Positions 661 to 44,698 of a stretch of 64,000 bases of DNA are shown piece by piece. The first letter of the stretch is position 1, and each line of letters begins with the position of its first letter. Below the pieces are notes generated by a model. The model saw nothing but the letters and a program-made list of their open reading frames with translations, was not told where the DNA came from and searched no databases. The stretch comes from Iphione sp. A-MEVVRFRX5 (taxonomy: Eukaryota): the NCBI GenBank assembly GCA_976226885.1, contig OZ320316.1, positions 85,994,001 through 86,058,000 on the forward strand, in the 5' to 3' direction. The translations under genes and the position numbers were made by a program.

Positions 661-909
661 AATGTATGTAGAGAGAAACGATCACTTGACGAGTATCGCA
701 AAAGGATGCAGTAAAGTAATGCTACCAACCGCTCATATTATGAGCAAGTTATCCCAAAATATTTCTGAACAAATACCTTAAAAGTAATTGATAAGCTCTT
801 AACCGATATCTACATCTATATTCTCTATGTGCCCCTTAGTACTCATTTTACACAAACGCCTCCGGCACTGGCATACACACTTACTCTCTGTCTCTGTCTC
901 TCTCTCTGT

Positions 910-961
910 GGGTTTATACCATGAATCAGAGGGTTTATACCGCGAATCGGTGGGTTTATAC
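910..961. repeat. 21-bp tandem repeat, about 2.5 copies
   Basis: GGGTTTATAC recurs at 910, 931 and 952. Confidence 0.8.
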
Positions 962-1265
962 TTTATAAAATTTTCCCCTGATTATTAAACTACATGCACC
1001 TATGTAAAACATTGCCTGAAATATATTCTCTGGGTGTGAGAAAGAGAGAGAGAGAGGGAGAGAGAGCGCTCATAACACTTTCTGCTTACTCATAGATCTG
1101 TGCTACGGGACATAATTATGGACTTAGGGGCAGGACATATAGATTTAGTCGTGGGAAATACGGACTAAGCAGCAGGACAGATGGACTTAGCGACAGGACA
1201 CCCAATGGCAGAGCAGCTTGGCGTGGCATCATCTGGGTCACCATGTCCGGAACTGACAAATTAGA

Positions 1266-1266
<1 letters not shown>

Positions 1267-1316
<50 letters not shown>

Positions 1317-1319
1317 AGA
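1267..1319. repeat. (GA)n microsatellite
   Basis: Direct reading. Smaller GA/CT runs occur at ~885-907, ~1040-1066 and 12821-12836. Confidence 0.95.
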
Positions 1320-2114
1320 CCGATAGATATTACTACACCCAGCTGAATAAAAAATAGTACACATGAATTCAATGATAGTCCTTTTAAATTGACAAAATAT
1401 GTGTTGATCTTCATCTTTCTGAATAATATTCACTAATATGTGAAGGAATTCAATAAATAAATATCTTTCTAAAGTGACATCACTATGAGATCAGACTTCG
1501 CTGGGCACGGACTACTTTCAGGAGACGTTTTAATAGGTAGTGTGATAATCATAGGCCAAATTCTAATTATAGGCCAATTTGCCTTCTGCCCGTTGTGTCC
1601 GAGATTTTCGAAAAGATAGTCTATAGGTAGTTGAATAGTTATTTGGTCGACAGTAAGTTGATGTCTGATTGTCAACATGGATATAGGCCAGCTAAAAGCA
1701 CTGTTAGTGCCATGACAACCTTAGTAAATGATATTTACCTGGCAAATAATCAGAGAAAAATACTTGGAGCAATATTTGTTGATGCACGGAAGGTTCAACT
1801 ACATTTTAATTCAAAATTAACTATTTTAAAAAGGAGTAAGGAAGAACCTAGAGTGGTTCCGAGGCTACTTAACAAAGAGGACTGTGAGAACATTTGCTAA
1901 TGGCATTATGAGTATGAGTCCAGGTTACTTAGTTCAATGTGGGGTACCGCAAGGTCAACCTTGGGGCCCCTTTTGTTCAGTACTTTTATTGATGACCTCC
2001 CTGATGAAATAGATGCTGAGAAAGGGGTATTATACGCTGATGATACCTGTTGTGTATGAAGAGGGCAAGGATACAAAAAGTACAGAAGATCGCCTTCAAA
2101 AGGCTGCGAATAAG

Positions 2115-2204
2115 TTTGAATTTGAATTTGAATTTACCTTTATTCAACAGTCTCCGTACATGGAAAGGACAGAGTTATCAGTAGTTGAATGTTGTTGAGT
2201 TACT
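2115..2204 (-). mobile_element. ~90-bp extreme 3' end of another L2-type LINE inserted antisense into the RT of LINE A
   Basis: The minus strand reads ...AATAAAGGT AAATTC AAATTC AAATTC. Removing it restores RLQKAANKFE/CWCYKNNLTI in the host RT. Confidence 0.75.
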
Positions 2205-2941
2205 GTGCTGGTGTTATAAAAATAATTTGACCATTTTCAAATCAAAGACAGAAGTAGTGCTATTCGATGTGAGGCAGAAGGCAAAGGACAAGGATATTGT
2301 ATGTATGGTTGATGGTACACAGTTGAGGCAGTCTGGAGGGTTATAGATATCTGGGCGTTTATTTAGATTGGAAGCAGACTCTTGAGAATCTTTTAATGTC
2401 ACAATACAAATCAGTGTATATGAAATTATGGTACCTAAACAAAATTAAAAATGAAATTACCAAATCAATAATGACACTAATCATTAAGCCATTTGTTGTA
2501 CCATTGATCAAATACAAGATGCAGATATGTTATGTTAACAATAGGGTATTGAGCAGAATTATGAAAGTTTTTGAATACAGGACAAGCCAACTGCTGAATA
2601 TCAGAAAACATAAGTATTACATATGAATGGTATAGAGGAGCGGCGTGACCAGTACAATATTGTAATGATGTGGGATATCATTAACAGTGCGAGAGAACTG
2701 GCCTCAATATATGAAAACTGAGTGAAAGACAAATACAACAGGAATAAAAAAACAATTATTAATAAATATCAAAAATAATTATTGAGGGTTTTCGAAAATC
2801 TCCAGTACATAACAGTACAATAATTTGGAATAAGCTGTCAGCGGCATTATTACGTGTCAAGGTAAACAAGGTTTAAAAAGTGGGTTAAAACTGTATTATG
2901 ACAAGCTGCGCCAGGAGAATTTCAAGATAAGATAAGGTGGT

Positions 2942-3591
2942 TTGAAACATGTTGAGAAGACTGCCCACAGTTGAGGACATGTGGTTCGAGAGAGAGAAAA
3001 TATGGTATGACCATGGTTAAGGCCATAACATAGTTATATACTCAGGGCTTTGTACATGAGCCTACCATACCATTGGAGGAATGTGGTAGTATGTTTGCAG
3101 CTTCATGTGGGAGATATGATAACTATGTATAGTCTGATACATAAAAGTCTTGTGTGCTTATGAAAATGTCGCCACATGACCACGGTTGAGGATAGTGGAA
3201 TGTAAAGACTACACAAGACATGACATTTTTTTCTTTCTAAAGCACCGTCTGACCACGGCTGAGGGCCGAGGTGCATATGGGGTTGTACATATGAATATAT
3301 ATTGAGGATTTTTCATTATTTGATCAAAATTGAGCATATATGTATACGAATCTATAAGGTATCCAACTCAAGTTTAAATCTACGTTTAAAATTCATGTCT
3401 CAATCATCACTCGACCACGGTTGAGGACAGTGATGTAAATTATTAGAGTTAAATGTGTTTATAGTAACGAATCGTCCTTGTAATACCATCTGTCTACAGT
3501 TGAGTAAGATGGCGCAACAGAAAGAAATAATTTCTAATAGTTTGAAAACCCACAAATGTTAAATCTGAGTCAACCTACATGTTGAAGTGAC
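2942..3591 (+). other. Array of ~10 NTGA-N6-(T/C)TGAG(G)A motifs, most in stem-loops, in the LINE A 3'UTR (putative structured RNA elements)
   Basis: See findings. The core is conserved and the closing stems differ in sequence but remain complementary. Confidence 0.7.
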
Positions 3592-3860
3592 GAAAATACG
3601 ATTATCTGTAGTAGTTGTAACGAAGTAAGAATTCCATTACATTAAACTCATATCGTTTTGTCAACCTGCACCAAGATCTGAAGTCCATATGGTGTATAGT
3701 CACCTTCAGTAATAAAGAATACCAATACCAATACCAATAATCTGTTGAATCTGTTTTTCTGGTCTCCCTTGATGGGGACACAAACCAGCCCCTGTCTCTT
3801 ATCTTCGCTACTTGTCATTTCCAATGGAATCAAATGGACGCAACCTTAAGGTAATACTTA

Positions 3861-9900: not shown

Positions 9901-12900
9901 TTACAGAAGTTTCCCACACTTTCCCGGGTCCTTATATAATATTTTCCCCATGGGCTCCATGCGGTACGCTTCTATCCAAATATCAGATAGACAAACTGCA
10001 CAATGGAACCTAAAATAGATTGCCAGTGGACCGGTTACGCTGACAATGACGGACCAACCAAGTTGGCCATAGTAGCTGTAAAAGATGCTGAAACGATGCA
10101 CCATCTTCATTTCAAATGTACTGATCAGCCACAGGGCTATATTAAGCAGCAACAAGAACGTAACAAAGGACCGACCCGGCTTTTTGGCAATGTGGTCCTT
10201 GGAAACGCTGCGACGGTGAAGACCATCGATAATGAAGGCCGTCAGGAGGGTAACTTGAAGAAAATTAAGGAAGCAGGAAGCGGACACCATTCGGCTCGAT
10301 CGGGTAATATAGGTGTCATCAGCGCTTATCTTCGCTATAGCCGCGACAACACTGAATCCATCAAGCAGGTAAGTGCCAAACAACGCCAGGATCAATAGGT
10401 TCTGATCCAGCAGGTCATGTGAGATATCACTGAAATGGAGCTTCATGATCTGCCAATAGGTGGGTACCAGGGTAACAAGCGTGAGCGTTTTCACGACAAG
10501 GTCGCTGCTGACATAAATGGCACCTACGGTGTGATCCATGCCTTGCTGGGTGGATAAATACAAGTAGAAACAAACGCCTATGGCCACAGCAATAAGCACG
10601 GATAACCCCATAAACAGACCCGTGTTTGCTTTGGAACACTCAATAGCCCGCGATTGCTTATCCTCCTGAGCAGGGTCGCCTTCACGATCTGATGCACGTC
10701 TTGCAGTCTTGACACGAGCTTCGTAATATTTAACCGGACCAACAGAGAAATGCATACGATACAGGATGGCGGCAGACAGCAGTGAATATTCTATGATGAA
10801 GGGAAACAAATACGGCGAGGCCACTGTGGACAACGTATTGGGGAACGCAATGCAGACGGCCGCGCTGTAGGCGCTATCGTTGTCTAGTCAAAAGAAAAGA
10901 AAGTGGAATTAAGGGAAGCATTAATAATGTGTGAATCTGGCGCTTAGATGTTCTAATGATCTGCTGCAAGACTAGACATACGAAGAGGTTCTCCTGTATG
11001 CATTTCTTCCCTAAATATTGCAGAGTGATTTGAGAATTGTGAAGGTGTAAATGTCATATGGTGGAAGATTGGTAACGAACCTGTTCTGTTTGAGTTTGAA
11101 TCCGTGCCATTTGTAGCCACGTCTCTTTTCTCTTGGTGATGTATACTGTGATTGTACGCCTCGACAGCTTCAATAACCACCATTGTCGCCCATGTCGCCA
11201 AATTCGTGGCAACATTGTGGAGAAGACCAAATTTGACCAGCGCTTTATGAACATTAACACCAGCCTAGAAGAGAAACTTAAAATAATATGTAACAAGAGG
11301 ACGACCGAAGGTTCAGATAATGAAGATAAGCATGCACACACAGTCTTACATATCATTATTTCAATATTCATGCAATGTACGCCCATGTATATGCATTGAA
11401 AAGTTTAACGAGAGATCCTGGCCATAATATTCTTGTATGGAAGATAATACATGCATACATTTGACCTATCTTATATAGGTACGATCTTTTTATCATAATT
11501 AATAGCATTTCAAACTGTGACATTAATGTAGGGTGAAATTTTATTTACACAATACATGTCAAGGTTAAACCCCTTTTACTCTCCCCGACTATTTACAGTA
11601 GAGACTCAGTTAACAACCAATCCACAGTGGAGACCAAACGGGAGGAGTGAGCAAGAATTCTAAAACTAAATGATTCATTTTCCTATAATGAGACTAGGTC
11701 AAATGGGACCACATGGTAAGAGACACCAAACTTGGCCAGTCCAAGCTTGGTCTTCTATGTGAGTCTCAACTGTAAATGTGTATGTGCAATTTATATTGTC
11801 TAGGAACTTGCTACGGACCTAACGAAATAACGGACAAAGGTTGAGTTGGAAAACAAAGCGCTTTACATACCGAGTGATACTTGAAGAGGGAAAAGGTCTG
11901 CACCATTACAAACACAAGCCTGAAGGCAACGGCTGCTAAATGAGCTGAGCCATAGCACTCCCACATGGCATGCATCTGAACGAACTCTACCAGGCGCACT
12001 CCGTCTAGCAGCACACCTCCCAGACCGAACGCTGGCCAGTCGCAACACACAAGTCAAGCTTAACTAAATGTGAGATGCCCTCGGGTCACAAAGTTTTATG
12101 TCTTCATTTAATTAGTCATAAAGTCGACCCACTAGACACAATGACGCCGAAGCAGTTATCCGTTTTCGGGAAAAATGACTACAAACTGCTTAGATAATTA
12201 ATACGAAAGACGATATTGTAAAATCTGTGACATACCAATAAGCCCCATGCGTAGAAAGAAGTTCACCCCGTCAAGAGTTTCGTATATTGCAGGTAATTTT
12301 ATTGTAGACAATCGCTCCTCATGTTCATTAGTTTTATTTCCACTTGAAAAATCGTCATCCGTTGCTTTCTGACTTTCATTTAATATTTGATTATTTCCGT
12401 TGACGCCTTCATCTCGATCACAAATGGCTTCCGGTGATTCGTTTTCTATTTCTTCTTTCTTCCGAAATAACAGGATGAAGTATACGAAGAAAACAGTCCC
12501 ACCAATGTATATATAGAAGTGAAATATCTGTGAAGAAAAGATAGATGTGACGATAAAAACTATATTTGAATCGGGTAACAGATTGAAATAAAAGATGTTT
12601 TATGGAATACGATTTTTCGTAAATTGATGTCACGTAGGCCTATCAATCAAAAACTTCAAATAAAATTGTTCAATATTGACAATAACTTACGGCTAAGTGT
12701 ACGCCGTGTTTCCTGAAGTTTCCACCAGACAGAAATATGGCAATTGGCAGGACAATTCCCAGTGCGACAAGTAGGAGAGCATATAAATGAGAGAACACCT
12801 CGATCATAAATCTCCTGGAAAGAGAGAGAGAGAGAGTCTACCGCAGTATTTCAGCTGTTCAATTAATAGTAAAAAAATACTCAATTGCCGCCTAGGCTAG

Positions 12901-19272: not shown

Positions 19273-21130
19273 TTGATTGAAATTGAAATTGAAATTGTTT
19301 ATTTGCCTTTCTCTGCATACAGAGCTCTCCAGGACAATTAGCAACCTTATCTCTAGGGGAAAATACAGTAGTAGTATAAGATACACCAGGTTATCATTGT
19401 AGCACCTTTACAGTAAACATTCTGATCCTTAGCCTTAATATCGGTATCACAGTTCTTTCAACATGATTACTTAAATTGGTACAACTTCAACAGAAACGTC
19501 CGGCTCTGAATGGCAAAATATATTCGGAACTTTTCTTATTGTAAGTATCACAAGTATCACATTGATGAAGAAAAGACATCAAAGCAATCATAAAAGCGGC
19601 ATCACAGCTGTCACATCATCACAGAGGAAAAGACTGCCTCTCTCAAGGCAGTTGACAACTACGTGATATCTGAGTTACATCAACCTTGCAGTGACATAAT
19701 ATAATAAGAGGCATAAGCCACCCAACTATAATGGCTAGATAGCCATGGGCGTAACTCGTTGTTATCAGTCCACAGTGTCTCAAGGAGACTCAGCGAGGAG
19801 TGTTCCGACTCATGGTACTAGATTTCCACTGCAACAAGTATCCACACCATCTTGATAAGTAAAGCTCCCTTTCAAGTTCGGGTTACAGATCCAGTGACAT
19901 TAAAACTCAGCTACTATATGAATGCACCTGCGATCATGTTCCAATAAGTGCTTACAGGCACTTTCTCACCAGAAGAACGTTCATGATACCAAACACTCCC
20001 AAGTAAATCAACTAGCACACCGCAGGAGTAGTTACAAGCACACACTTGTTATCGAGTATCTTAACTCACCAAAACAGTCAGACTCACTATCGTTTTGCCA
20101 AAACTAATCCAAGTATGCCGAGCCTCATTTGCCACACGGATACAAGTGGAGATAAATTCATTCCATAAATGTAGACAACTTCTCACCTGATCAACATACG
20201 CTCTTAGTTAGAGCCACGCGTACACCACAGGATCACTTACAGGTGCACCAGAGAAAACTGAGATCACTCCTATTCAGTGAGGAGAACACCTTGTTAAAGG
20301 TTCACCCCTTGATTGACGAACTCCTTCCATTATAGCCTTTTGACATAGGTTGCTACTCGGCTACCTGCCTCGACCCCAGAGACTCCTTAATTTAAGCCAA
20401 TGGGCACTACATTGGCAGGAAGTTTCTGGCATTTTTTGACTTCCATTGGCAGTCTGTTCCATTTGCATACTCCTCTGCATGCCAGTGACCTCGCAAAGGT
20501 AGTTGACCTCGGCCTGTCAACTTGCCCTCTGGGCTCCTTTCCCGTTTGGGTAGCTGATTCTCGGTCCAATTGGAGCAGACCCAGTTTGTGAAGCTTGTGG
20601 ATGGCAGTCAACACTTGGTATTCAATCAGGGTCTCAATGCGTTGGATGCCATATTTCCTACTGAGGCTAGATGCAGAGATGAAATTATTCCGCTGCAGCA
20701 CTGCTCTGCAGCAGTGATTCAGATGAATCTGCAGGCACACCTGGTCGGATTTTGAGATTCCGTACCACAGTGCTGCATGGTACCTGAAGTGTGGTAGTAT
20801 TAGTGCCTTTAGGAGCAGCAGGCTGGCATTGAAAGGCAGAATAACCTTCAGCCTAGAAAGTGACTTGGTAATCGACCACATCTTTCTTTGTACTGCCTTG
20901 ATGCTGTCCTTCATCTTCAGTCCACCGTCAATGTGGTACCCCAACAGTTTCATGCATTTTTCCATCCTCAGTGCCTCTGACCCTTAAGTCAGTTCCAGAG
21001 GTATCCCTGCTCTGAGTCGCTTCAAGTCCTCCCCATCGCATCGAACAAATTATTCTCTCTCTGATAGGTATGATGCGATCATTCCTCGTAGCTTTGGTCC
21101 TGCATTCAGTTCCAAGAGCCGACGCAGGAT
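19273..21130 (-). mobile_element. 5'-truncated CR1/L2-group LINE (LINE C): partial RT, C-terminus, ~1.1-kb 3'UTR and (AATTTC)n tail
   Basis: SILRRLLEL..YLSER (21000-21130) and ORF 20387-20965 (KLLGYHIDG, LLLKALILPHFRY, RGVCKWNRLP). The tail is AATAAAC AATTTC x3 at 19275-19303. Confidence 0.88.
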
Positions 21131-21132
21131 GC

Positions 21133-24130
21133 TTTTTTTGAATTTGAATATTCTTTATTCTGAATCATTGGCAGGTTACAAAGTTCTTCGTCCGAACCCG
21201 GACTGTATGGAAAGCACAAGTGACAAGGTGATAAATAAATACAGAAAAATTAGATACCAAGTGTTTGTATAGTCTATTTGCACCTCCATCACATCAAAAG
21301 TATCAACACAGTCTGTAGAGGCACCTATAAACCTACGATCTCTGTTATATCCCTATAACACAGTCTGTAGAGGCTCCTAAAAACCCTACGATCTCTGTTT
21401 TGTCCCCTATAAATCGAAACCCACTACACCTCTAAAAGGAACACCTCCCTATTAACTTCAGTCGACTATCCTAGACCTTAAATTAACTGCCAGCGTTTCA
21501 TGCACAGGGCAAGCAAAACTCACTTGTCTGGTGGCTACCGACCCATTCAGTAATATATCCAATATCACACCCCAGTCAGGCACACATCTAAGAGAAAAAT
21601 CTTATACACCAGGATCAACATCTGTCACACACACTAGCGTTATACACAGTGGTGACAAAACCCTTCATATTACTGACATGACATCAGCATCGTGATAAGC
21701 CATTTCCACCACTTGGAGGTTACACTTGTCACTCACAACATCCTGAGGCTTCACATTCATGCAAACAGGTAAAGCATCCATGGCACCTATTTATTCTTCA
21801 GATGTTCCCACAGCACATTCAAGGGGGGCTTCTTTTGTCCCTTTAGGCCAGGTGGCAATTTACTCCACTGCAGGAGTCCCCTGTAGCGCAGAGACCTAGC
21901 AAACTTTGTTGACCTAGGCCTCGACACCCTTCCTAGTCGCCTACTACCTGCCCTGGAGACCGTGGCTTCTCATTCGGGCAGAAGACCTAGTCACATCAAC
22001 TTATGCATGATACCAACCCCCTTGCACTCAACTAGCTCCTTCACCCTGGGAATCCCTACTCTTGCAAGGAAGCTATTGGGGCTCTGCCTAGGGTTTGACA
22101 TAACAGCCATCCTTGCACATTGGTTGACTGCCAGCTGTAGCCTGACAATATCAGATGCACTCACTCCATAAAGTGCAAATGCTCCATACCATAGGTGAGC
22201 TAGTACTAAGCATTTAAATAACATAACTCTCATGAACAATGGAAGCTTTAGTTTCACTCTGGCCAGTTTGAGGGATGATGCCCACATTTTTGCACATATT
22301 GACCTGATAGCTAATTTAAAATTTAGCTTGGCATCCACTACGAAACCCAGCAGTGTTGTGTTTGTGACCATAACCAGCCTCTCACCACTCACTTGGAGGT
22401 CTAAGTCAAACCCAGTCGACTTTCCCACTGGCATGTAATGGCACTTATTAATGCTGAGCAGTAAGCCTTGCTGATCACACCACTGAGCCACACATTCCAG
22501 AGCTTGGAGGCACCTCCTGCACAACTGAAGCAGATCAGGAGCATTGACTATCAAAGTCATGTCATCGTTGATGTGGCACTATGTCAAATGCCTTGGCGAA
22601 GTCGAAACTCAGGTTGCATGCGTAGGTTCTCGCATTCAGCAGGCATCTCGCTTTATTGACAAGGCTTATTATTGCCGTCTCCGTTCCCCTGCCTGCTCTG
22701 AAACCATGCTGGCAGTTATGCAGATGTCCCAGGCCTTGAAGCTTCTTCATCAAGGCCGGTACGAACCAGCCTTCACAGATCTTCCCTTGCATTGGAAGTA
22801 TTGAGATTGGTCTGTAGTTCGAGAGATCATTGTGGTCACCCTGTTTCAGTAGCGGGGTGACTCGGGCCACTTTCCATGATCTGGGGTAGTTTCCAGTCTG
22901 ATAGATATTGTTGTGACAGGAAGTCTGGAACCAGGCAAAGCAAGGGCTTCAGTACCTTTATAGGTATGCCTTCCAGTCCTGAAGACTTAGCGACCTTTTG
23001 CTTTTGTGTCAAACATAGGATCTCTGTCAGGGTTGGAGGATCCTGCTCAAACCCTTGATCCACCAAGCCGCACCAAACTTCTAGCCTATGGGTGGGGGAA
23101 CACATAGTTCCTTGACACCATTGACAAAGAAGTGGTTCATCGCATCAGGAACTGATGTTCCTAGCCTTTTCCTGACCACGTCTTTCTCAGGCAGCTTGGT
23201 GATCTTCACATCAGTACCCATTGCTTCACGTAGGACAGTCCAGACTTTCCTGGTATCCTTACCCATCGACCTAACCTTGAATTCCCACCATCTTCTGTGG
23301 CATGTCTGCATGGCTAGCTTAGCTCTGGTGTTGAGGAATTGGAAGATTTGTTGACTGTCTTCACATTTCCACTTTCTCCATTTTTTGAGGTAGTATGCTC
23401 TGTTAGAATTGGACCAAGGGACCCGAGAGTTACTTGCGGACAGAGCATACTCTTGGTTCCCTGCCCCTCTCCGAATCTGTGTTGTGCTTTTATCAGATGT
23501 CCACCTTTCTCCAATTTGATGCTGAGCTCCTTAATTGGTGAACCAGGGTTCACACCATTTACCTTGGATAGGTAATATGGACACTGGCCTACCTCCTCAA
23601 CAGAGCCACGCTTGTGTACCGGGGTTATACAGGTGACTTTCCAGCTCACGGGGTAGCGTCCTGTCCTGTATATCTCTCCAAATTGCCATGATATGAAATC
23701 CAGCCACAGCTGAAATCGCGGCTTAATGATTCTAGTTGGCACAGCCATGAGACCGGATGACTTGGAGGTCTTAATCCTTTTCACCAGTACCCTCACCTCC
23801 TCCGGTGTCGGAGGGGTCAATTCAAAGCCCATGACCTGCAGGAGCTCTTTCTTTTTTTCCATATCTCTCGAAAAGTCATCATCGGTGACTCCTGAAATTT
23901 CCTCAACCTCATGAACAAAGAAGCGGTTCAGGGAGGAAGCAAAACAGGTCAGGCAGTTTTTCCATTCTTGATTTTCTATGCAGCGCCTCATTTAGACATG
24001 ACATGCTTGTTTACTGTTGCCTCGTGGAGATGGTGAATGTCCACTTTGACCTTGAGAAAGATAATGAACCATAGTATGGCTTGCTAGGGTCATTGTGATG
24101 GATTATATGGCCATGTAAAGGGAGCCATGG
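21133..24130 (-). mobile_element. 5'-truncated CR1/L2-group LINE (LINE D) with an internal RT deletion
   Basis: ORF fragments 23314-23991, 23081-23311, 22836-23105, 22562-22870 (NYRPISILP, CQHGFRAG, DFAKAFDIVPH) and 21991-22560. The GVPQG/YA block is deleted between PH and DD. The tail is AATAAAGAATATTCAAATTCAAAAAAA at 21133-21159. Confidence 0.9.
21305..21411. repeat. 52-bp tandem duplication inside the LINE D 3'UTR
   Basis: AACACAGTCTGTAGAGGC..CCTACGATCTCTGTT..CCCTATA at 21305 and 21357. Confidence 0.85.
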
Positions 24131-42900: not shown

Positions 42901-44698
42901 CGGAAGACAAACGCAGGTGAACACACCTCAGGCTCAACGAATATGTGCAGAATCGGCCCTAAACCGGCCAATTTGCATTATAAACCCGCCAATCCAGGTC
43001 ATGCTAACACCTCTGATTGCATGTTAGACAATGAATAACCCTTCAAAGATTCTATTTAGGGAAGAGTGGTCACATTTACAGCTCTGATTCCACGTTAGAC
43101 AATGAATAACCCTAACACCTATGGTCTCAGGATATCTGAATGGTCGCCACTGGTCGCAAAGAGGTCAAAGGGTGGAAGACAGTCTGCCCGGCAATAGGCA
43201 CATTGATAGAAGGCTTAACAGGGGAAAATGGTTTCCATTCTAAACTCATACGGTCGTATAAGCAGATTTGGGTACAAACTGGTCGCAAATCAGCATTCGA
43301 CTATACATACATGTATTGATAACATTTATTACATGTGACCTGCCTTATACTCATAATCTAGAATTCCCTTAAATGTGACACGGTGGATATCTGAAGGAAG
43401 CTTATTCAAACATATGCGTACACTGCTACTTCCAGTTGGTTTTCAACTTTCACCATCCGCTAATCAAGTTTGGGCTCCTCCACATGGTTGCTACAAACTT
43501 GATACTGTGGATCAAGACCGTTGCGCAGGACGGGGTCGGTTTTTATGTATTATTTCAAGAGTTGGAGGATCATCATACACTATACAAACGAGCCACGAAG
43601 AACCATACTGAAGGTATTTGTGGATGGTACTAATGCAATAAATGTCTTCATCGGATCACGAATTTTTTATTTTAAAAATTGTCATCTAGACTCATCTGTT
43701 ATAATTGACCTCTGAATAAAATTCTAAATGCTCATGATGTTTGGGGCCTTTTCTTTTTTGCAGAAGTAACAATGGCTGAATACCTGTGTCTCGATAAGGA
43801 CAGTATCAACTTCCGTAGCAGTTTCTACCTCAGTCCTTTAATTATTGGCTACTGTGTTCTCGCCGCCAGCATTCTCTACAAAAAATACTCCGAGGTCGGA
43901 CCGTCGGTTTACATGGTGCCTGCTAGGATGGAAGTGTGGGAGCGCGAGGGAACCTCCTCCTCCGAGGAGGAGAGGCCTCGCTGGGGGCGGCCAAACATAG
44001 GTCTAATCCTGGGGGCGGTTCTCCTTCTTGTGACATGTGGTCTGACCGGCTGGCTGCTCTTCCTGCAGGACTGGCGCGCAGACAACCGATACGTCGAGAC
44101 GATGGGACAAATCCACATTGGATGCGATCTCACCTTGAACATTATAACCTTGATCGCTTTGGTTCCGGCGTTCTACTACACCAGCAAGTTGCCATTCAAG
44201 GCTACGCCCAACGGGCTGCTGGAAAGAATGTTTCTAGGAACACTTGGGGGCATGTTTTTCTTACTTGGATTTATGACGCATTCAGCATTTTTTCTTATCA
44301 ATGACTCCGAGTTTGGTGGCCCCGCCAAGATGGCAGTGCCAGGTTGCATTCTAAACTTCATCCAAGCAAGCGCGATGTATGTCTATGTAATGGATGCCTG
44401 GCGACGCCGTTTAGCATCAATCAATCAGAACCATGGAAAAGACTGTGTAACATTTCTCATCTTTGCGAACGTTTCAATATGGCTGGTGACAAGTTTCCAG
44501 TGGAAACTTTCCTTCGGATCATTTTTATTTCTTAGGAGCTATGGTCTGCTTCCGTGGGTTCTGATCGTGAACTCAGCATTACCCCTGGCTATGTTCTTTC
44601 GATACATTGTGTGCCTGATGTTGATGGAAATGCTCCGAAAGACCTACGGTCTGCACTTAAGACGCTGGTTCTGCTTCTTCTCCACTGAGACCCATTGA
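36986..44698 (+). CDS. OTOP: Divergent otopetrin-family protein (paralogue B), 624 aa. Exons 36986-37125, 41005-41131, 41320-41650, 41848-42011, 43436-43613, 43764-44698
   Basis: GT-AG introns with phases 2,0,1,0,1 as in paralogue A; the 1875-nt CDS is open. Motifs: IYALLLTSLG, NLFTRIGVLVFGLSG, IRMIFFIVQS, KFGLLHMVATN, YLSPLIIGYC, HGKDCVTFLIFANVSIW, PLAMFFRY. Exon 1 is assigned by phase and analogy and is less certain. Confidence 0.88.
39190..39720 (+). repeat. Interspersed repeat; inverted copy at ~58880-59450
   Basis: For example, TATAGTATCAGAATACTGCACTTTCTCATATACTTTAAAAATAAATATAGATGCCTCAGCATGTTCTCAAT matches the reverse complement of ~59135-59205 with few mismatches. Confidence 0.8.
42062..43303. 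mobile_element. Non-autonomous Tc1/mariner(pogo)-type element in intron 4 of OTOP B
   Basis: TA|CAGTAGAATGCCGATTTGCG ... CGCAAATCAGCATTCGACTA|TA. It holds internal degenerate tandem repeats (42150-42320, 42655-42800), the former similar to 33380-33620. Confidence 0.65.

What the first reader, a model, noticed from the sequence alone, without database searches (positions are those of the whole stretch)
2942..3591. Array of kink-loop-like (box D'/C') stem-loops with covarying stems in a LINE 3'UTR
Seen in sequence: between the LINE A stop (~2900) and its tail, the motif NTGA-N6-YTGAG(G) recurs about 10 times. The copies are TTGA AACATG TTGAGAA (2942), CTGC CCACAG TTGAGGA (2961), ATGA CCATGG TTAAGG (3007), degenerate CCATTG GAGGA (3070), ATGA CCACGG TTGAGGA (3176), CTGA CCACGG CTGAGGG (3249), ATGA ATATATA TTGAGGA (3291), TTGA TCAAAA TTGAGCA (3320), TCGA CCACGG TTGAGGA (3411), CTGT CTACAG TTGAGTA (3490) and a degenerate one at 3570. 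The flanks are not conserved in sequence but pair: TATGG/CCATA (3001/3023), CTACCA/TGGTAG (3062/3084), CCAC/GTGG (3172/3195, itself inside a 9-bp GTCTTGTGT/ACACAAGAC stem at 3147/3211), GCACC/GGTGC (3242/3270), CATCACT/AGTGATG (3405/3429), CCATCT/AGATGG (3486/3507) and GTCA/TGAC (3569/3588). A simple tandem duplication would conserve the stems and spacers along with the loops; here only the loop and the pairing are kept, which points to selection on RNA structure. Established knowledge: CUGA-short loop-RUGAUGA is the D'/C' kink-turn/kink-loop of box C/D RNAs bound by L7Ae/15.5K-family proteins, and UGAGGA is a common C' variant. Inference: this LINE RNA may carry a multivalent protein-binding scaffold (host K-turn protein recruitment, localisation, stability or cis-recognition by ORF2p). 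I am not aware of a description of this in CR1/L2-group elements.
Basis: partly seen in the sequence, partly recalled or inferred. Interest (0 to 1): 0.82.

Follow-up and report, generated by a model that had tools for sequence, protein, structure and literature searches.

The report
Repeated RNA hairpins in LINE tail
The untranslated tail of a decayed jumping gene (LINE) holds seven to eleven small RNA hairpins with the same 13-16-letter top on differing stems, which look like repeated protein docking sites; the proposed kink-turn identity is not established.

Summary
Window 2902-3717 is the 3'UTR of a decayed, 5'-truncated LINE. Its ORF2 stops at 2899-2901 and its (AATACC)n tail lies at 3718-3739.

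- **Core motif:** CCACGGTTGAGGA occurs six times with at most 3 mismatches. There is also one indel variant and four weaker copies, all on the LINE's sense strand.
- **Conservation:** hairpin segments resemble each other about 12 sd above shuffles. Spacers sit at shuffle level.
- **Stems:** each copy's flanks pair with each other better than with flanks of other copies (P about 1e-4). The stems therefore differ in sequence but stay complementary.

This argues for selection on a reiterated RNA hairpin in the master lineage.

The kink-loop reading is not established. All four G/A letters occur in 6 of 11 copies. Two Watson-Crick alternatives for the hairpin top fit equally well. A generic K-loop descriptor occurs 1.2 times per kb by chance, and Rfam gives only chance-level box C/D hits.

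No other copy of this family could be fetched, so everything rests on paralogues within one decayed copy.

My best reading is a multivalent docking array, probably for the element's own protein, as in stringent-type LINE tail recognition. This scan has noted similar arrays, with different hairpin tops, in other LINE families of the same genome.

The parts
1480..2901 (+). Decayed ORF2 of LINE A. It is 5'-truncated, carries many stops and about 6 frameshifts, and ends at the stop TGA 2899-2901.
   Evidence: The three-frame translation shows NYRPI, FVDARK, GVPQG, YADD and a C-terminal IWNKL...FKKWVKTVL*. Pfam scans of four pieces gave no RT hit. The only credible HMMER relative, P0003, carries a weak RVT_1 hit.
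2902..3717 (+). 3'UTR of LINE A (816 nt, 37% GC), filled by the hairpin array.
   Evidence: It lies between the ORF2 stop and the microsatellite tail.
2936..2965 (+). Hairpin c1: stem GGTGGTT(T)/(A)GACTGCC with G-U pairs, top TGA-AACATG-TTGAGAA (degenerate core).
   Evidence: RNAfold gives an 8-bp stem at -7.3 kcal/mol, z=-1.0. This stem forms only on the + strand.
2961..2984 (+). Copy c2: CTGC-CCACAG-TTGAGGA. It pairs through its own core, CCACA/TGTGG.
   Evidence: z=-0.05.
3001..3027 (+). Hairpin c3: stem TATGG/CCATA, top TATGA-CCATGG-TTAAGG.
   Evidence: -7.9 kcal/mol, z=-1.4.
3062..3089 (+). Hairpin c4: stem CTACCA(TA)/(TG)TGGTAG, top CCATTGGAGGA (indel variant).
   Evidence: -10.5 kcal/mol, z=-2.3.
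3146..3220 (+). Hairpin c5 (stem CCAC 3172-3175 / GTGG 3195-3198, top ATGA-CCACGG-TTGAGGA), nested inside a 10-bp outer stem at 3147-3156/3210-3219.
   Evidence: 77 nt, -22.9 kcal/mol, z=-3.1.
3242..3274 (+). Hairpin c6: stem GCACC/GGTGC, top GTCTGA-CCACGG-CTGAGGG.
3291..3336 (+). Weak copies c7 (ATGA-ATATATA-TTGAGGA, with ATGAA/TTCAT) and c8 (TTGA-TCAAAA-TTGAGCA, no clear stem).
3405..3435 (+). Hairpin c9, the best copy: stem CATCACT/AGTGATG, top CGA-CCACGG-TTGAGGA.
   Evidence: RNAfold prefers an inner 6-bp helix CUCGAC/GUUGAG with a CACG loop.
3486..3512 (+). Hairpin c10: stem CCATCT/AGATGG, top GT-CTACAG-TTGAGTA.
   Evidence: -8.6 kcal/mol, z=-1.9.
3569..3591 (+). Degenerate hairpin c11: stem GTCA/TGAC, top AC-CTACATG-TTGAAG.
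3678..3709 (+). Weak terminal stem-loop (CUGAA/UUCAG with inner GGUG/CACC) just upstream of the tail.
   Evidence: -6.8 kcal/mol, z=-1.2. Not significant on its own.
3718..3739 (+). (AATACC)3.7 microsatellite tail, taken as the 3' end of the LINE.
   Evidence: TRF. No target-site duplication of 7 nt or more was found.

Best explanation
The 3'UTR of this LINE is built from a reiterated small RNA hairpin. Each copy has a 4-8-bp stem whose sequence differs between copies. The stem is capped by a conserved 13-16-nt top, (Y)GA-CCACGG-UUGAGGA.

Shown:
- the motif cluster;
- copy-specific complementary flanks;
- loss of all similarity in the spacers.

Inferred:
- The master lineage kept the top sequence and the pairing under purifying selection while everything else drifted.
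- The mismatches now seen in the cores, several of CpG-to-TpG/CpA type, are mostly neutral decay after this copy inserted.
- The array acts on the sense LINE RNA as a multivalent docking site that is loop-specific and stem-generic.
- The likeliest binder is the element's own protein (the ORF2p tail-binding region, or ORF1p). This would raise avidity for cis RNP assembly and cognate template choice. It would extend the single 3'-tail stem-loop that stringent-type L2/CR1 LINEs use.

Whether the hairpin top folds with tandem sheared G.A pairs (K-loop-like) or with Watson-Crick pairs is open.
For: - Motif cluster: (6 copies in 530 nt; 0 of 100 shuffles reached the 15-mer count).
- Copy-specific stems: cognate against swapped flanks, P about 1e-4; P about 0.001 against random positions.
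- Conservation confined to the hairpins: (hairpins 8.2 against 5.0 +/- 0.27; spacers 7.5 against 7.6).
- All copies lie on the LINE sense strand and fill the space between the ORF2 stop and the tail.
- Core changes at the CG are CA or TG in c2, c3 and c10, in a window with CpG o/e 0.58.
- Precedent: ORF2 of L2-clade LINEs binds its cognate 3'-tail stem-loop, with general recognition of the stem and specific recognition of the loop (PMC4176376).
- Unverified leads from this scan: other LINE families of this genome carry arrays with different tops. That would fit family-specific binders.
Against: - Only one decayed copy is available, so there is no covariation across family members.
- Folding energies are unremarkable: whole UTR z=-0.2, single hairpins z from -0.05 to -2.3.
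- The hairpins are equally stable on either strand (-72.8 against -71.8 kcal/mol). The structure alone therefore does not say RNA sense strand.
- The array is not adjacent to the tail, where known recognition stem-loops sit.
- The 5' part of the element, with ORF1 and the putative tail-binding region, is missing or decayed. No cognate protein can be examined.
- A distant relative (L002) has a short A-tailed UTR without any array.
Confidence: 0.45

Rival explanations
1. Each hairpin top is a K-loop (D'-like NUGA, short loop, C'-like UUGAGGA) closed by tandem sheared G.A/A.G pairs. A host L7Ae-family protein (Snu13/15.5K, SBP2, L30-type) would bind it.
For: - The letters G2n-A1n...G1b-A2b, with a pairable 3n-3b (U.G or C-G), are present in c1, c5, c6, c7, c8 and c9.
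- c1 and c8 keep TGA...TTGAG although the CCACGG part is largely replaced.
- The 8-nt loop length is in the range of K-loops.
- L7Ae-type proteins make no significant contact with the C helix, so they should bind K-loops as well as K-turns (PMC3884654).
Against: - Key letters are missing in c2 (A1n to C), c3 (G1b to A), c4, c10 (A1n to U) and c11.
- The loop CCACGG is as conserved as the GA letters in the seven good copies, which a K-loop does not require.
- RNAfold prefers Watson-Crick alternatives.
- The descriptor is low-information, occurring 1.2 times per kb by chance.
- No Rfam box C/D match was found.
- Snu13p needs a closing base pair at the bulge (PMC1874613).
- Other LINE families of this genome are reported to use quite different tops (unverified). 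That argues against one universal host K-turn binder.
Confidence: 0.1
2. The array binds a host RNA-binding protein other than a K-turn binder. That protein would give the LINE mRNA nuclear export, germline or oocyte localisation, stability or translational control.
For: - It rests on the same structural evidence as the best explanation.
- The array occupies the body of the 3'UTR rather than the extreme tail, as regulatory mRNA elements usually do.
- From established knowledge, small stem-loop localisation signals are known in Drosophila LINE transcripts (I factor, G2, Jockey), and an NXF1-binding element is known in the human L1 3'UTR.
Against: - No match to any curated cis-regulatory RNA family.
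- The top does not fit the Smaug SRE, IRE, Roquin CDE or histone stem-loop consensus (checked by eye, from memory).
- Family-specific tops in other LINEs of this genome (unverified) fit a co-evolving own protein better.
Confidence: 0.15
3. There is no function. The array is the decayed remnant of an internal tandem repeat (unit about 45-110 nt, often 73-81) that happened to contain a short palindrome. The apparent conservation and pairing are leftovers.
For: - Core-to-core spacings are 46, 59, 110, 73, 43, 31, 88, 79 and 81 nt. This loosely suggests an old tandem array.
- Tandem repeats are common in LINE UTRs.
- Folding z-scores are weak.
- Stability is equal on the two strands.
Against: - Neutral decay after duplication would erode cores and spacers alike. 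Yet spacers are at shuffle level while the hairpin tops stay similar.
- c5 and c9 share an identical 15-mer.
- Stems differ in sequence but each pairs with its own partner. That pattern needs compensatory change.
- TRF finds no tandem array here.
Confidence: 0.2
4. The hairpins act at the DNA or first-strand cDNA level. Examples are cruciform or snap-back structures during target-primed reverse transcription or second-strand synthesis, or repeated transcription-factor sites.
For: - The stems are almost all Watson-Crick and are equally stable on the minus strand.
- The core contains a TGACC half-site-like string.
Against: - The c1 stem needs three G-U pairs and forms only on the + strand.
- The inner helix alternative also uses G-U pairs.
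- There is no precedent that I know of.
- The stems are too short for stable cruciforms.
Confidence: 0.05

Closest known systems
3'-tail stem-loop of stringent-type LINEs (eel UnaL2, zebrafish ZfL2-1/ZfL2-2; L2 clade)
   Same: - It is a hairpin in the 3'UTR of a LINE that ends in short tandem repeats.
- Recognition is described as general for the stem and specific for the loop, by the ORF2 tail-binding region (PMC4176376).
- This matches the pattern here of a conserved top on stems of free sequence.
   Different: - The known elements are a single stem-loop next to the tail repeats.
- Here 7-11 copies are spread over about 650 nt, and the last clear copy ends 126-205 nt before the tail.
- No binding or retrotransposition data exist.
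- The LINE clade is not determined.
K-turn / K-loop motifs bound by L7Ae-family proteins (box C/D C'/D' K-loops, U4 5' stem-loop, SECIS)
   Same: - In 6 of 11 copies two GA dinucleotides face each other across a short loop, next to a pairable U.G or C-G.
- UUGAGGA differs from the C-box RUGAUGA at one position.
   Different: - The GA letters are not invariant, and the loop sequence is conserved as strongly as they are.
- The flanks pair with each other instead of serving as guides.
- There is no C/D terminal motif and no Rfam match.
- Geometry and binding are untested.
- Snu13p prefers a closed bulge (PMC1874613).
Hairpin arrays noted by this scan in other LINE families of the same genome (s1-347216, s1-349323 and first-reader notes)
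   Same: They are arrays of 5-6 small hairpins with an invariant top and covarying stems, in LINE UTRs or spacers. Follow-up agents read them as multi-copy protein docking sites.
   Different: - The top sequences differ (for example GAU-GUG-AUC, GGGUUC, UCAN).
- Some lie upstream of ORF2.
- Those notes are unverified AI notes, and I did not inspect their loci.
Retroviral packaging signals (several stem-loops with exposed G-rich loops bound by Gag/NC)
   Same: They are multivalent sets of small hairpins whose loops, not stems, carry the specificity for the element's own protein. This comparison comes from established knowledge and was not tested here.
   Different: - They sit in the 5' leader rather than the 3'UTR.
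- They are not reiterated copies of one hairpin.
- ORF1 of this element is missing, so no zinc-knuckle partner can be shown.

Membership tests
K-turn / K-loop (L7Ae-family binding motif) | Tandem sheared G.A and A.G pairs (G1b, A2b, G2n, A1n) | tested here: inconclusive
   All four letters are present in c1, c5, c6, c7, c8 and c9. They are incomplete in c2, c3, c4, c10 and c11. The losses are compatible with neutral decay of this copy. The sheared geometry cannot be read from sequence.
K-turn / K-loop (L7Ae-family binding motif) | A three-nucleotide bulge, or a terminal loop in place of the C helix, directly 5' of G1b | tested here: inconclusive
   An 8-nt loop (CCACGGYU) separates A1n from G1b in the good copies. 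RNAfold instead pairs part of this loop, either as YGAC/GUUG or as CC/GG.
K-turn / K-loop (L7Ae-family binding motif) | The pattern is specific enough to stand out from background | tested here: not met
   A descriptor of a >=4-bp stem plus GA-N7-9-GA gives 156 hits in 128 kb (1.2 per kb). In the UTR it gives 3 hits against about 1 expected.
K-turn / K-loop (L7Ae-family binding motif) | Binding by an L7Ae-family protein | not testable with these tools
   This needs EMSA or footprinting.
Box C/D RNA | C (RUGAUGA) and D (CUGA) boxes with a terminal stem and a guide, scoring above the Rfam gathering threshold | tested here: not met
   cmscan of 2900-3750 found only snoZ196, snoU30 and snoR117, at 14-19 bits against gathering scores of 42-55 and E 7.9-9.8. 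Nothing was found in the region at E<=10 when 8 kb was searched.
Stringent-type LINE 3'-tail recognition stem-loop | Lies in the 3'UTR of a LINE that ends in short tandem repeats | tested here: met
   ORF2 stops at 2899-2901, the (AATACC)n tail is at 3718-3739, and the array lies between them.
Stringent-type LINE 3'-tail recognition stem-loop | Loop sequence specific, stem sequence free but paired | tested here: met
   The top is conserved and the stems are copy-specific. This was tested only among paralogues within one copy.
Stringent-type LINE 3'-tail recognition stem-loop | A single stem-loop immediately upstream of the tail repeats | tested here: not met
   There are 7-11 copies spread over 2936-3591. 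The segment next to the tail (3678-3709) folds only weakly and has a different sequence.
Stringent-type LINE 3'-tail recognition stem-loop | Bound by the cognate ORF2 protein and required for retrotransposition | not testable with these tools
   ORF2 is decayed, and the region between EN and RT is missing from this truncated copy.
CR1/L2-group LINE | RT and C-terminal ORF2 similarity to the clade | tested here: inconclusive
   RT motifs and a CR1-like C-terminus are visible in translation, but that assignment is from memory. Pfam found nothing in four pieces. Word searches found nothing. HMMER found one credible relative at 29% identity.

The most novel reading that the evidence does not exclude
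An animal LINE carries an array of K-loop-like modules in its 3'UTR. These would load several copies of a host L7Ae-family protein (Snu13/SBP2-type) onto the LINE RNA, borrowing the snoRNP/snRNP/SECIS assembly route for RNP formation, localisation or stability.
Probability: 0.08. Interest if true: 0.8.

Novelty: new variant of a known kind. Interest (0 to 1): 0.45.

Why it matters
Stringent-type LINEs are known to be recognised through one stem-loop at their 3' tail. An array of 7-11 hairpins with one conserved top and free stems would instead point to avidity-based, multivalent recognition of LINE RNA. I found no report of that layout in the searched literature. It would also give a concrete, testable RNA-protein pair for template choice or RNP assembly in an invertebrate-type LINE.

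This scan has flagged similar arrays with other tops in further LINE families of the same genome. The phenomenon may therefore be general there, with family-specific codes.

The specific kink-turn claim would be more surprising but is currently weak.

Tried and rejected
- **Other copies in the window:** blastn of 1401-3800 against the window found only itself.
- **Relatives through protein searches:** two word searches with ORF2 pieces found nothing. The full HMMER search with the 99-aa C-terminal piece gave 3 weak hits. One is a bacterial false positive (L001). One is a 550-nt contig (L003). One is a distant LINE (L002) whose short A-tailed UTR has no array.
- **Relatives through DNA:** a metagenome scan for TGACCACGGTTGAGGA returned 120+ single chance hits in mostly GC-rich, apparently bacterial contigs. 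None was an array.
- **Consensus folding:** MAFFT plus RNAalifold on the paralogues gave no consensus structure, because the stems sit at different offsets from the core. I used a cognate-against-swapped flank test instead.
- **Minus-strand coding** (the PQPWS peptide from the reverse complement): rejected. The copies fall in different frames and the spacings are not multiples of 3.
- **Long-range partner for the loop:** only scattered 6-mers were found, no more than expected.
- **5S rRNA resemblance** (from memory): Rfam gave no 5S hit at E<=10.
- **miRNA precursor reading of 3001-3069:** only a chance-level hit on the wrong strand (E 1.8).
- **Target-site duplication:** none of 7 nt or more.

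Full report
**What is there**

The + strand from about 1480 to 3739 is a decayed, 5'-truncated LINE.
- Three-frame translation shows reverse-transcriptase remnants: NYRPI, FVDARK, GVPQG and YADD. It also shows an ORF2 C-terminus (IWNKL...FKKWVKTVL*) ending at the TGA at 2899-2901.
- The frame is broken by roughly ten stops and six frameshifts.
- Pfam did not recognise the short pieces.
- TRF finds (AATACC)3.7 at 3718-3739, which I take as the microsatellite tail.
- The 3'UTR is therefore 2902-3717 (816 nt, 37% GC).
- No target-site duplication was found. The boundaries therefore rest on the coding remnants and the tail.
- The assignment to the CR1/L2 group rests on my memory of that C-terminal pattern and on the tail type. 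It was not confirmed by any tool.

**Check of the observation**

The strict core CCACGGTTGAGGA behaves as follows.
- It occurs six times with at most three mismatches, at 2965, 3011, 3180, 3253, 3415 and 3494. All are on the + strand.
- About ten such matches occur in the remaining ~127 kb of both strands.
- The 15-mer with up to three mismatches gives 5 matches against 0.93 expected. None of 100 shuffles reached 5.
- An indel variant lies at 3070. Weaker copies lie at 2942, 3291, 3320 and 3570.

Four of those six matches nevertheless fall inside 392 nt of this UTR, where 0.02 is expected.

**Are the stems real and copy-specific?**

- The longest Watson-Crick stem between the 14-nt flanks of the six cores averages 4.8 bp. 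At random window positions it averages 3.4 bp (P about 0.001).
- In a swap test over nine copies, each 5' flank pairs better with its own 3' flank than with the 3' flanks of other copies. The mean stem is 5.0 against 3.3 bp (permutation P=1.4e-4). The duplex energy is -6.6 against -3.2 kcal/mol (P about 1e-4).
- The stems are therefore different sequences that each match their own partner. This is covariation among paralogues.
- Spacers between hairpins are no more alike than shuffled sequence (7.5 against 7.6 +/- 0.35). Hairpin segments are (8.2 against 5.0 +/- 0.27).
- TRF sees no tandem array.
- Decay after insertion hits all positions alike. The contrast between cores and spacers must therefore predate the insertion, which points to selection in the master lineage. 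This step is inference.

Several core changes are of CpG-decay type: CACGG to CACAG in c2 and c10, and to CATGG in c3. The window has CpG o/e 0.58 and TpG/CpA o/e 1.23. The master probably carried near-identical cores. The TGA of most copies, against CGA in c9, may likewise be a decay product.

**Limits of the structural evidence**

- Single hairpins fold with z-scores from -0.05 to -2.3.
- The c5 hairpin with its 10-bp outer stem reaches z=-3.1.
- The whole UTR folds no better than shuffles (z=-0.2).
- Alternative folds exist, for example one ~70-nt hairpin over 3001-3069 (z=-2.0).
- Summed hairpin stability is the same on both strands (-72.8 against -71.8 kcal/mol). Only c1 depends on G-U pairs.

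**Test of the kink-loop reading**

[quoted passage not shown] In a K-loop a terminal loop replaces the C helix. L7Ae contacts G1b and G2n specifically (PMC3884654).

Here the four letters (G2n A1n ... G1b A2b) are complete in c1, c5, c6, c7, c8 and c9. They are incomplete in c2, c3, c4, c10 and c11. The 3n-3b position is always pairable, as U.G or C-G.

In favour:
- c1 and c8 keep TGA...TTGAG although the CCACGG part is largely changed.

Against:
- In the seven good copies the loop CCACGG is as conserved as the GA letters.
- The change G1b to A in c3 breaks the key G.A pair. It keeps a U-A pair in the rival inner-helix model.
- RNAfold prefers Watson-Crick tops. One is a 6-bp helix CUCGAC/GUUGAG with a CACG loop in c9, with a 4-bp version in c3. 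The other is a CC/GG pair closing an 8-nt loop in c4 and c5, with CU/AG in c11.
- A generic descriptor (a >=4-bp stem with GA-N7-9-GA) occurs 1.2 times per kb in this window. It gives 3 hits in the UTR against about 1 expected.
- Rfam gives no significant hit. Three box C/D families appear at 14-19 bits against gathering scores of 42-55 and E 7.9-9.8.

The K-loop fold is neither shown nor excluded. Membership in box C/D RNAs is rejected.

**Search for relatives**

- No second copy lies in the window.
- Two word-based protein searches with ORF2 pieces were blank.
- The full HMMER search with the 99-aa C-terminal piece gave three weak hits.
  - P0001 is a bacterial false positive.
  - P0002 sits on a 550-nt contig.
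  - P0003 (29% identity, weak RVT_1) is a LINE on a 1.5-Mb eukaryote-like contig. Its 3'UTR is short, A-tailed and without any array.
- A metagenome scan for the 16-mer returned only single chance hits in apparently bacterial contigs.
- All inference therefore rests on paralogues within one decayed copy.

**Context from this scan (unverified AI notes)**

Many first-reader notes in the same genome describe hairpin arrays with conserved tops and covarying stems in LINE UTRs or inter-ORF spacers. Two follow-ups (s1-347216, s1-349323) read them as multi-copy protein docking sites with family-specific tops. They found no published report. I did not inspect those loci.

In my own window the second LINE (minus strand, 20387-23991) shows only a weak hint. 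CTGTAA occurs four times in its UTR, twice as a hairpin loop.

**Best explanation**

The array is a reiterated cis-acting hairpin of the sense LINE RNA, with a specific top and a free but paired stem. It serves as a multivalent docking site.

The closest documented mechanism is the stringent-type LINE tail. ORF2 of zebrafish L2-clade LINEs binds its cognate 3' stem-loop, recognising the stem generally and the loop specifically (PMC4176376). I therefore favour the element's own protein as the binder. That choice is inference, and I give the whole explanation a confidence of about 0.45.

Differences from the known case:
- There are 7-11 copies instead of one.
- They are spread over the UTR body rather than abutting the tail.
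- The segment next to the tail (3678-3709) folds weakly and is unrelated in sequence.

Rivals:
- a host RNA-binding protein for export, localisation or stability (0.15);
- a functionless decayed tandem repeat (0.20, disfavoured);
- a DNA- or cDNA-level role (0.05).

**Novelty**

Full-text searches found no description of hairpin arrays in LINE UTRs and no link between kink-turns and non-LTR retrotransposons. I rate it a new variant of a known kind, namely LINE 3'UTR recognition hairpins.

Interest is moderate. The same kind of array has already been flagged elsewhere in this genome.

I made no attempt to repair the ORF2 frame or to build a consensus of the element.

Noticed in passing
window 19400-23991 (minus strand): A second LINE (LINE B) has ORF2 pieces at 20387-23991. 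Its 3'UTR holds CTGTAA four times (about 0.4 expected). Two of these are hexaloops of small hairpins: AAGTGC/GCACTT at 19957 and CAC/GTG at 20242. About nine GGTG(A/T/C)G boxes are also present. This may be a weaker case of the same phenomenon.
   Followed up: partly
window 884-1319: Simple and 21-nt tandem repeats lie just upstream of the truncated LINE: 910-961, 1117-1200 and (AG)n at 1263-1319. They show no relation to the hairpin core.
   Followed up: no
window 3001-3069: This segment can fold as one ~70-nt imperfect hairpin (-21.5 kcal/mol, z=-2.0) that competes with the small hairpins c3 and c4. Rfam mir-458 gives a chance-level hit on the minus strand (E 1.8).
   Followed up: partly
window 3062-3074 and the cores at 3178-3190 and 3251-3263: From memory, GCCTACCATACCA and ACCACGG(C/T)TGAG recall the 5' part of 5S rRNA. 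The Rfam 5S model gave no hit at E<=10 in 2900-3750, so I treat this as chance.
   Followed up: partly
window 9901-10833 (-) and 43772-44698 (+): Two long ORFs of 308-310 aa resemble each other and look like multi-pass membrane proteins. I did not examine them.
   Followed up: no
L002:6001-7130: A distant LINE relative (29% identity to the ORF2 C-terminal piece) lies on a 1.5-Mb ENA metagenome contig that looks eukaryotic. Its short 3'UTR ends in an A-rich tail and has no hairpin array.
   Followed up: partly
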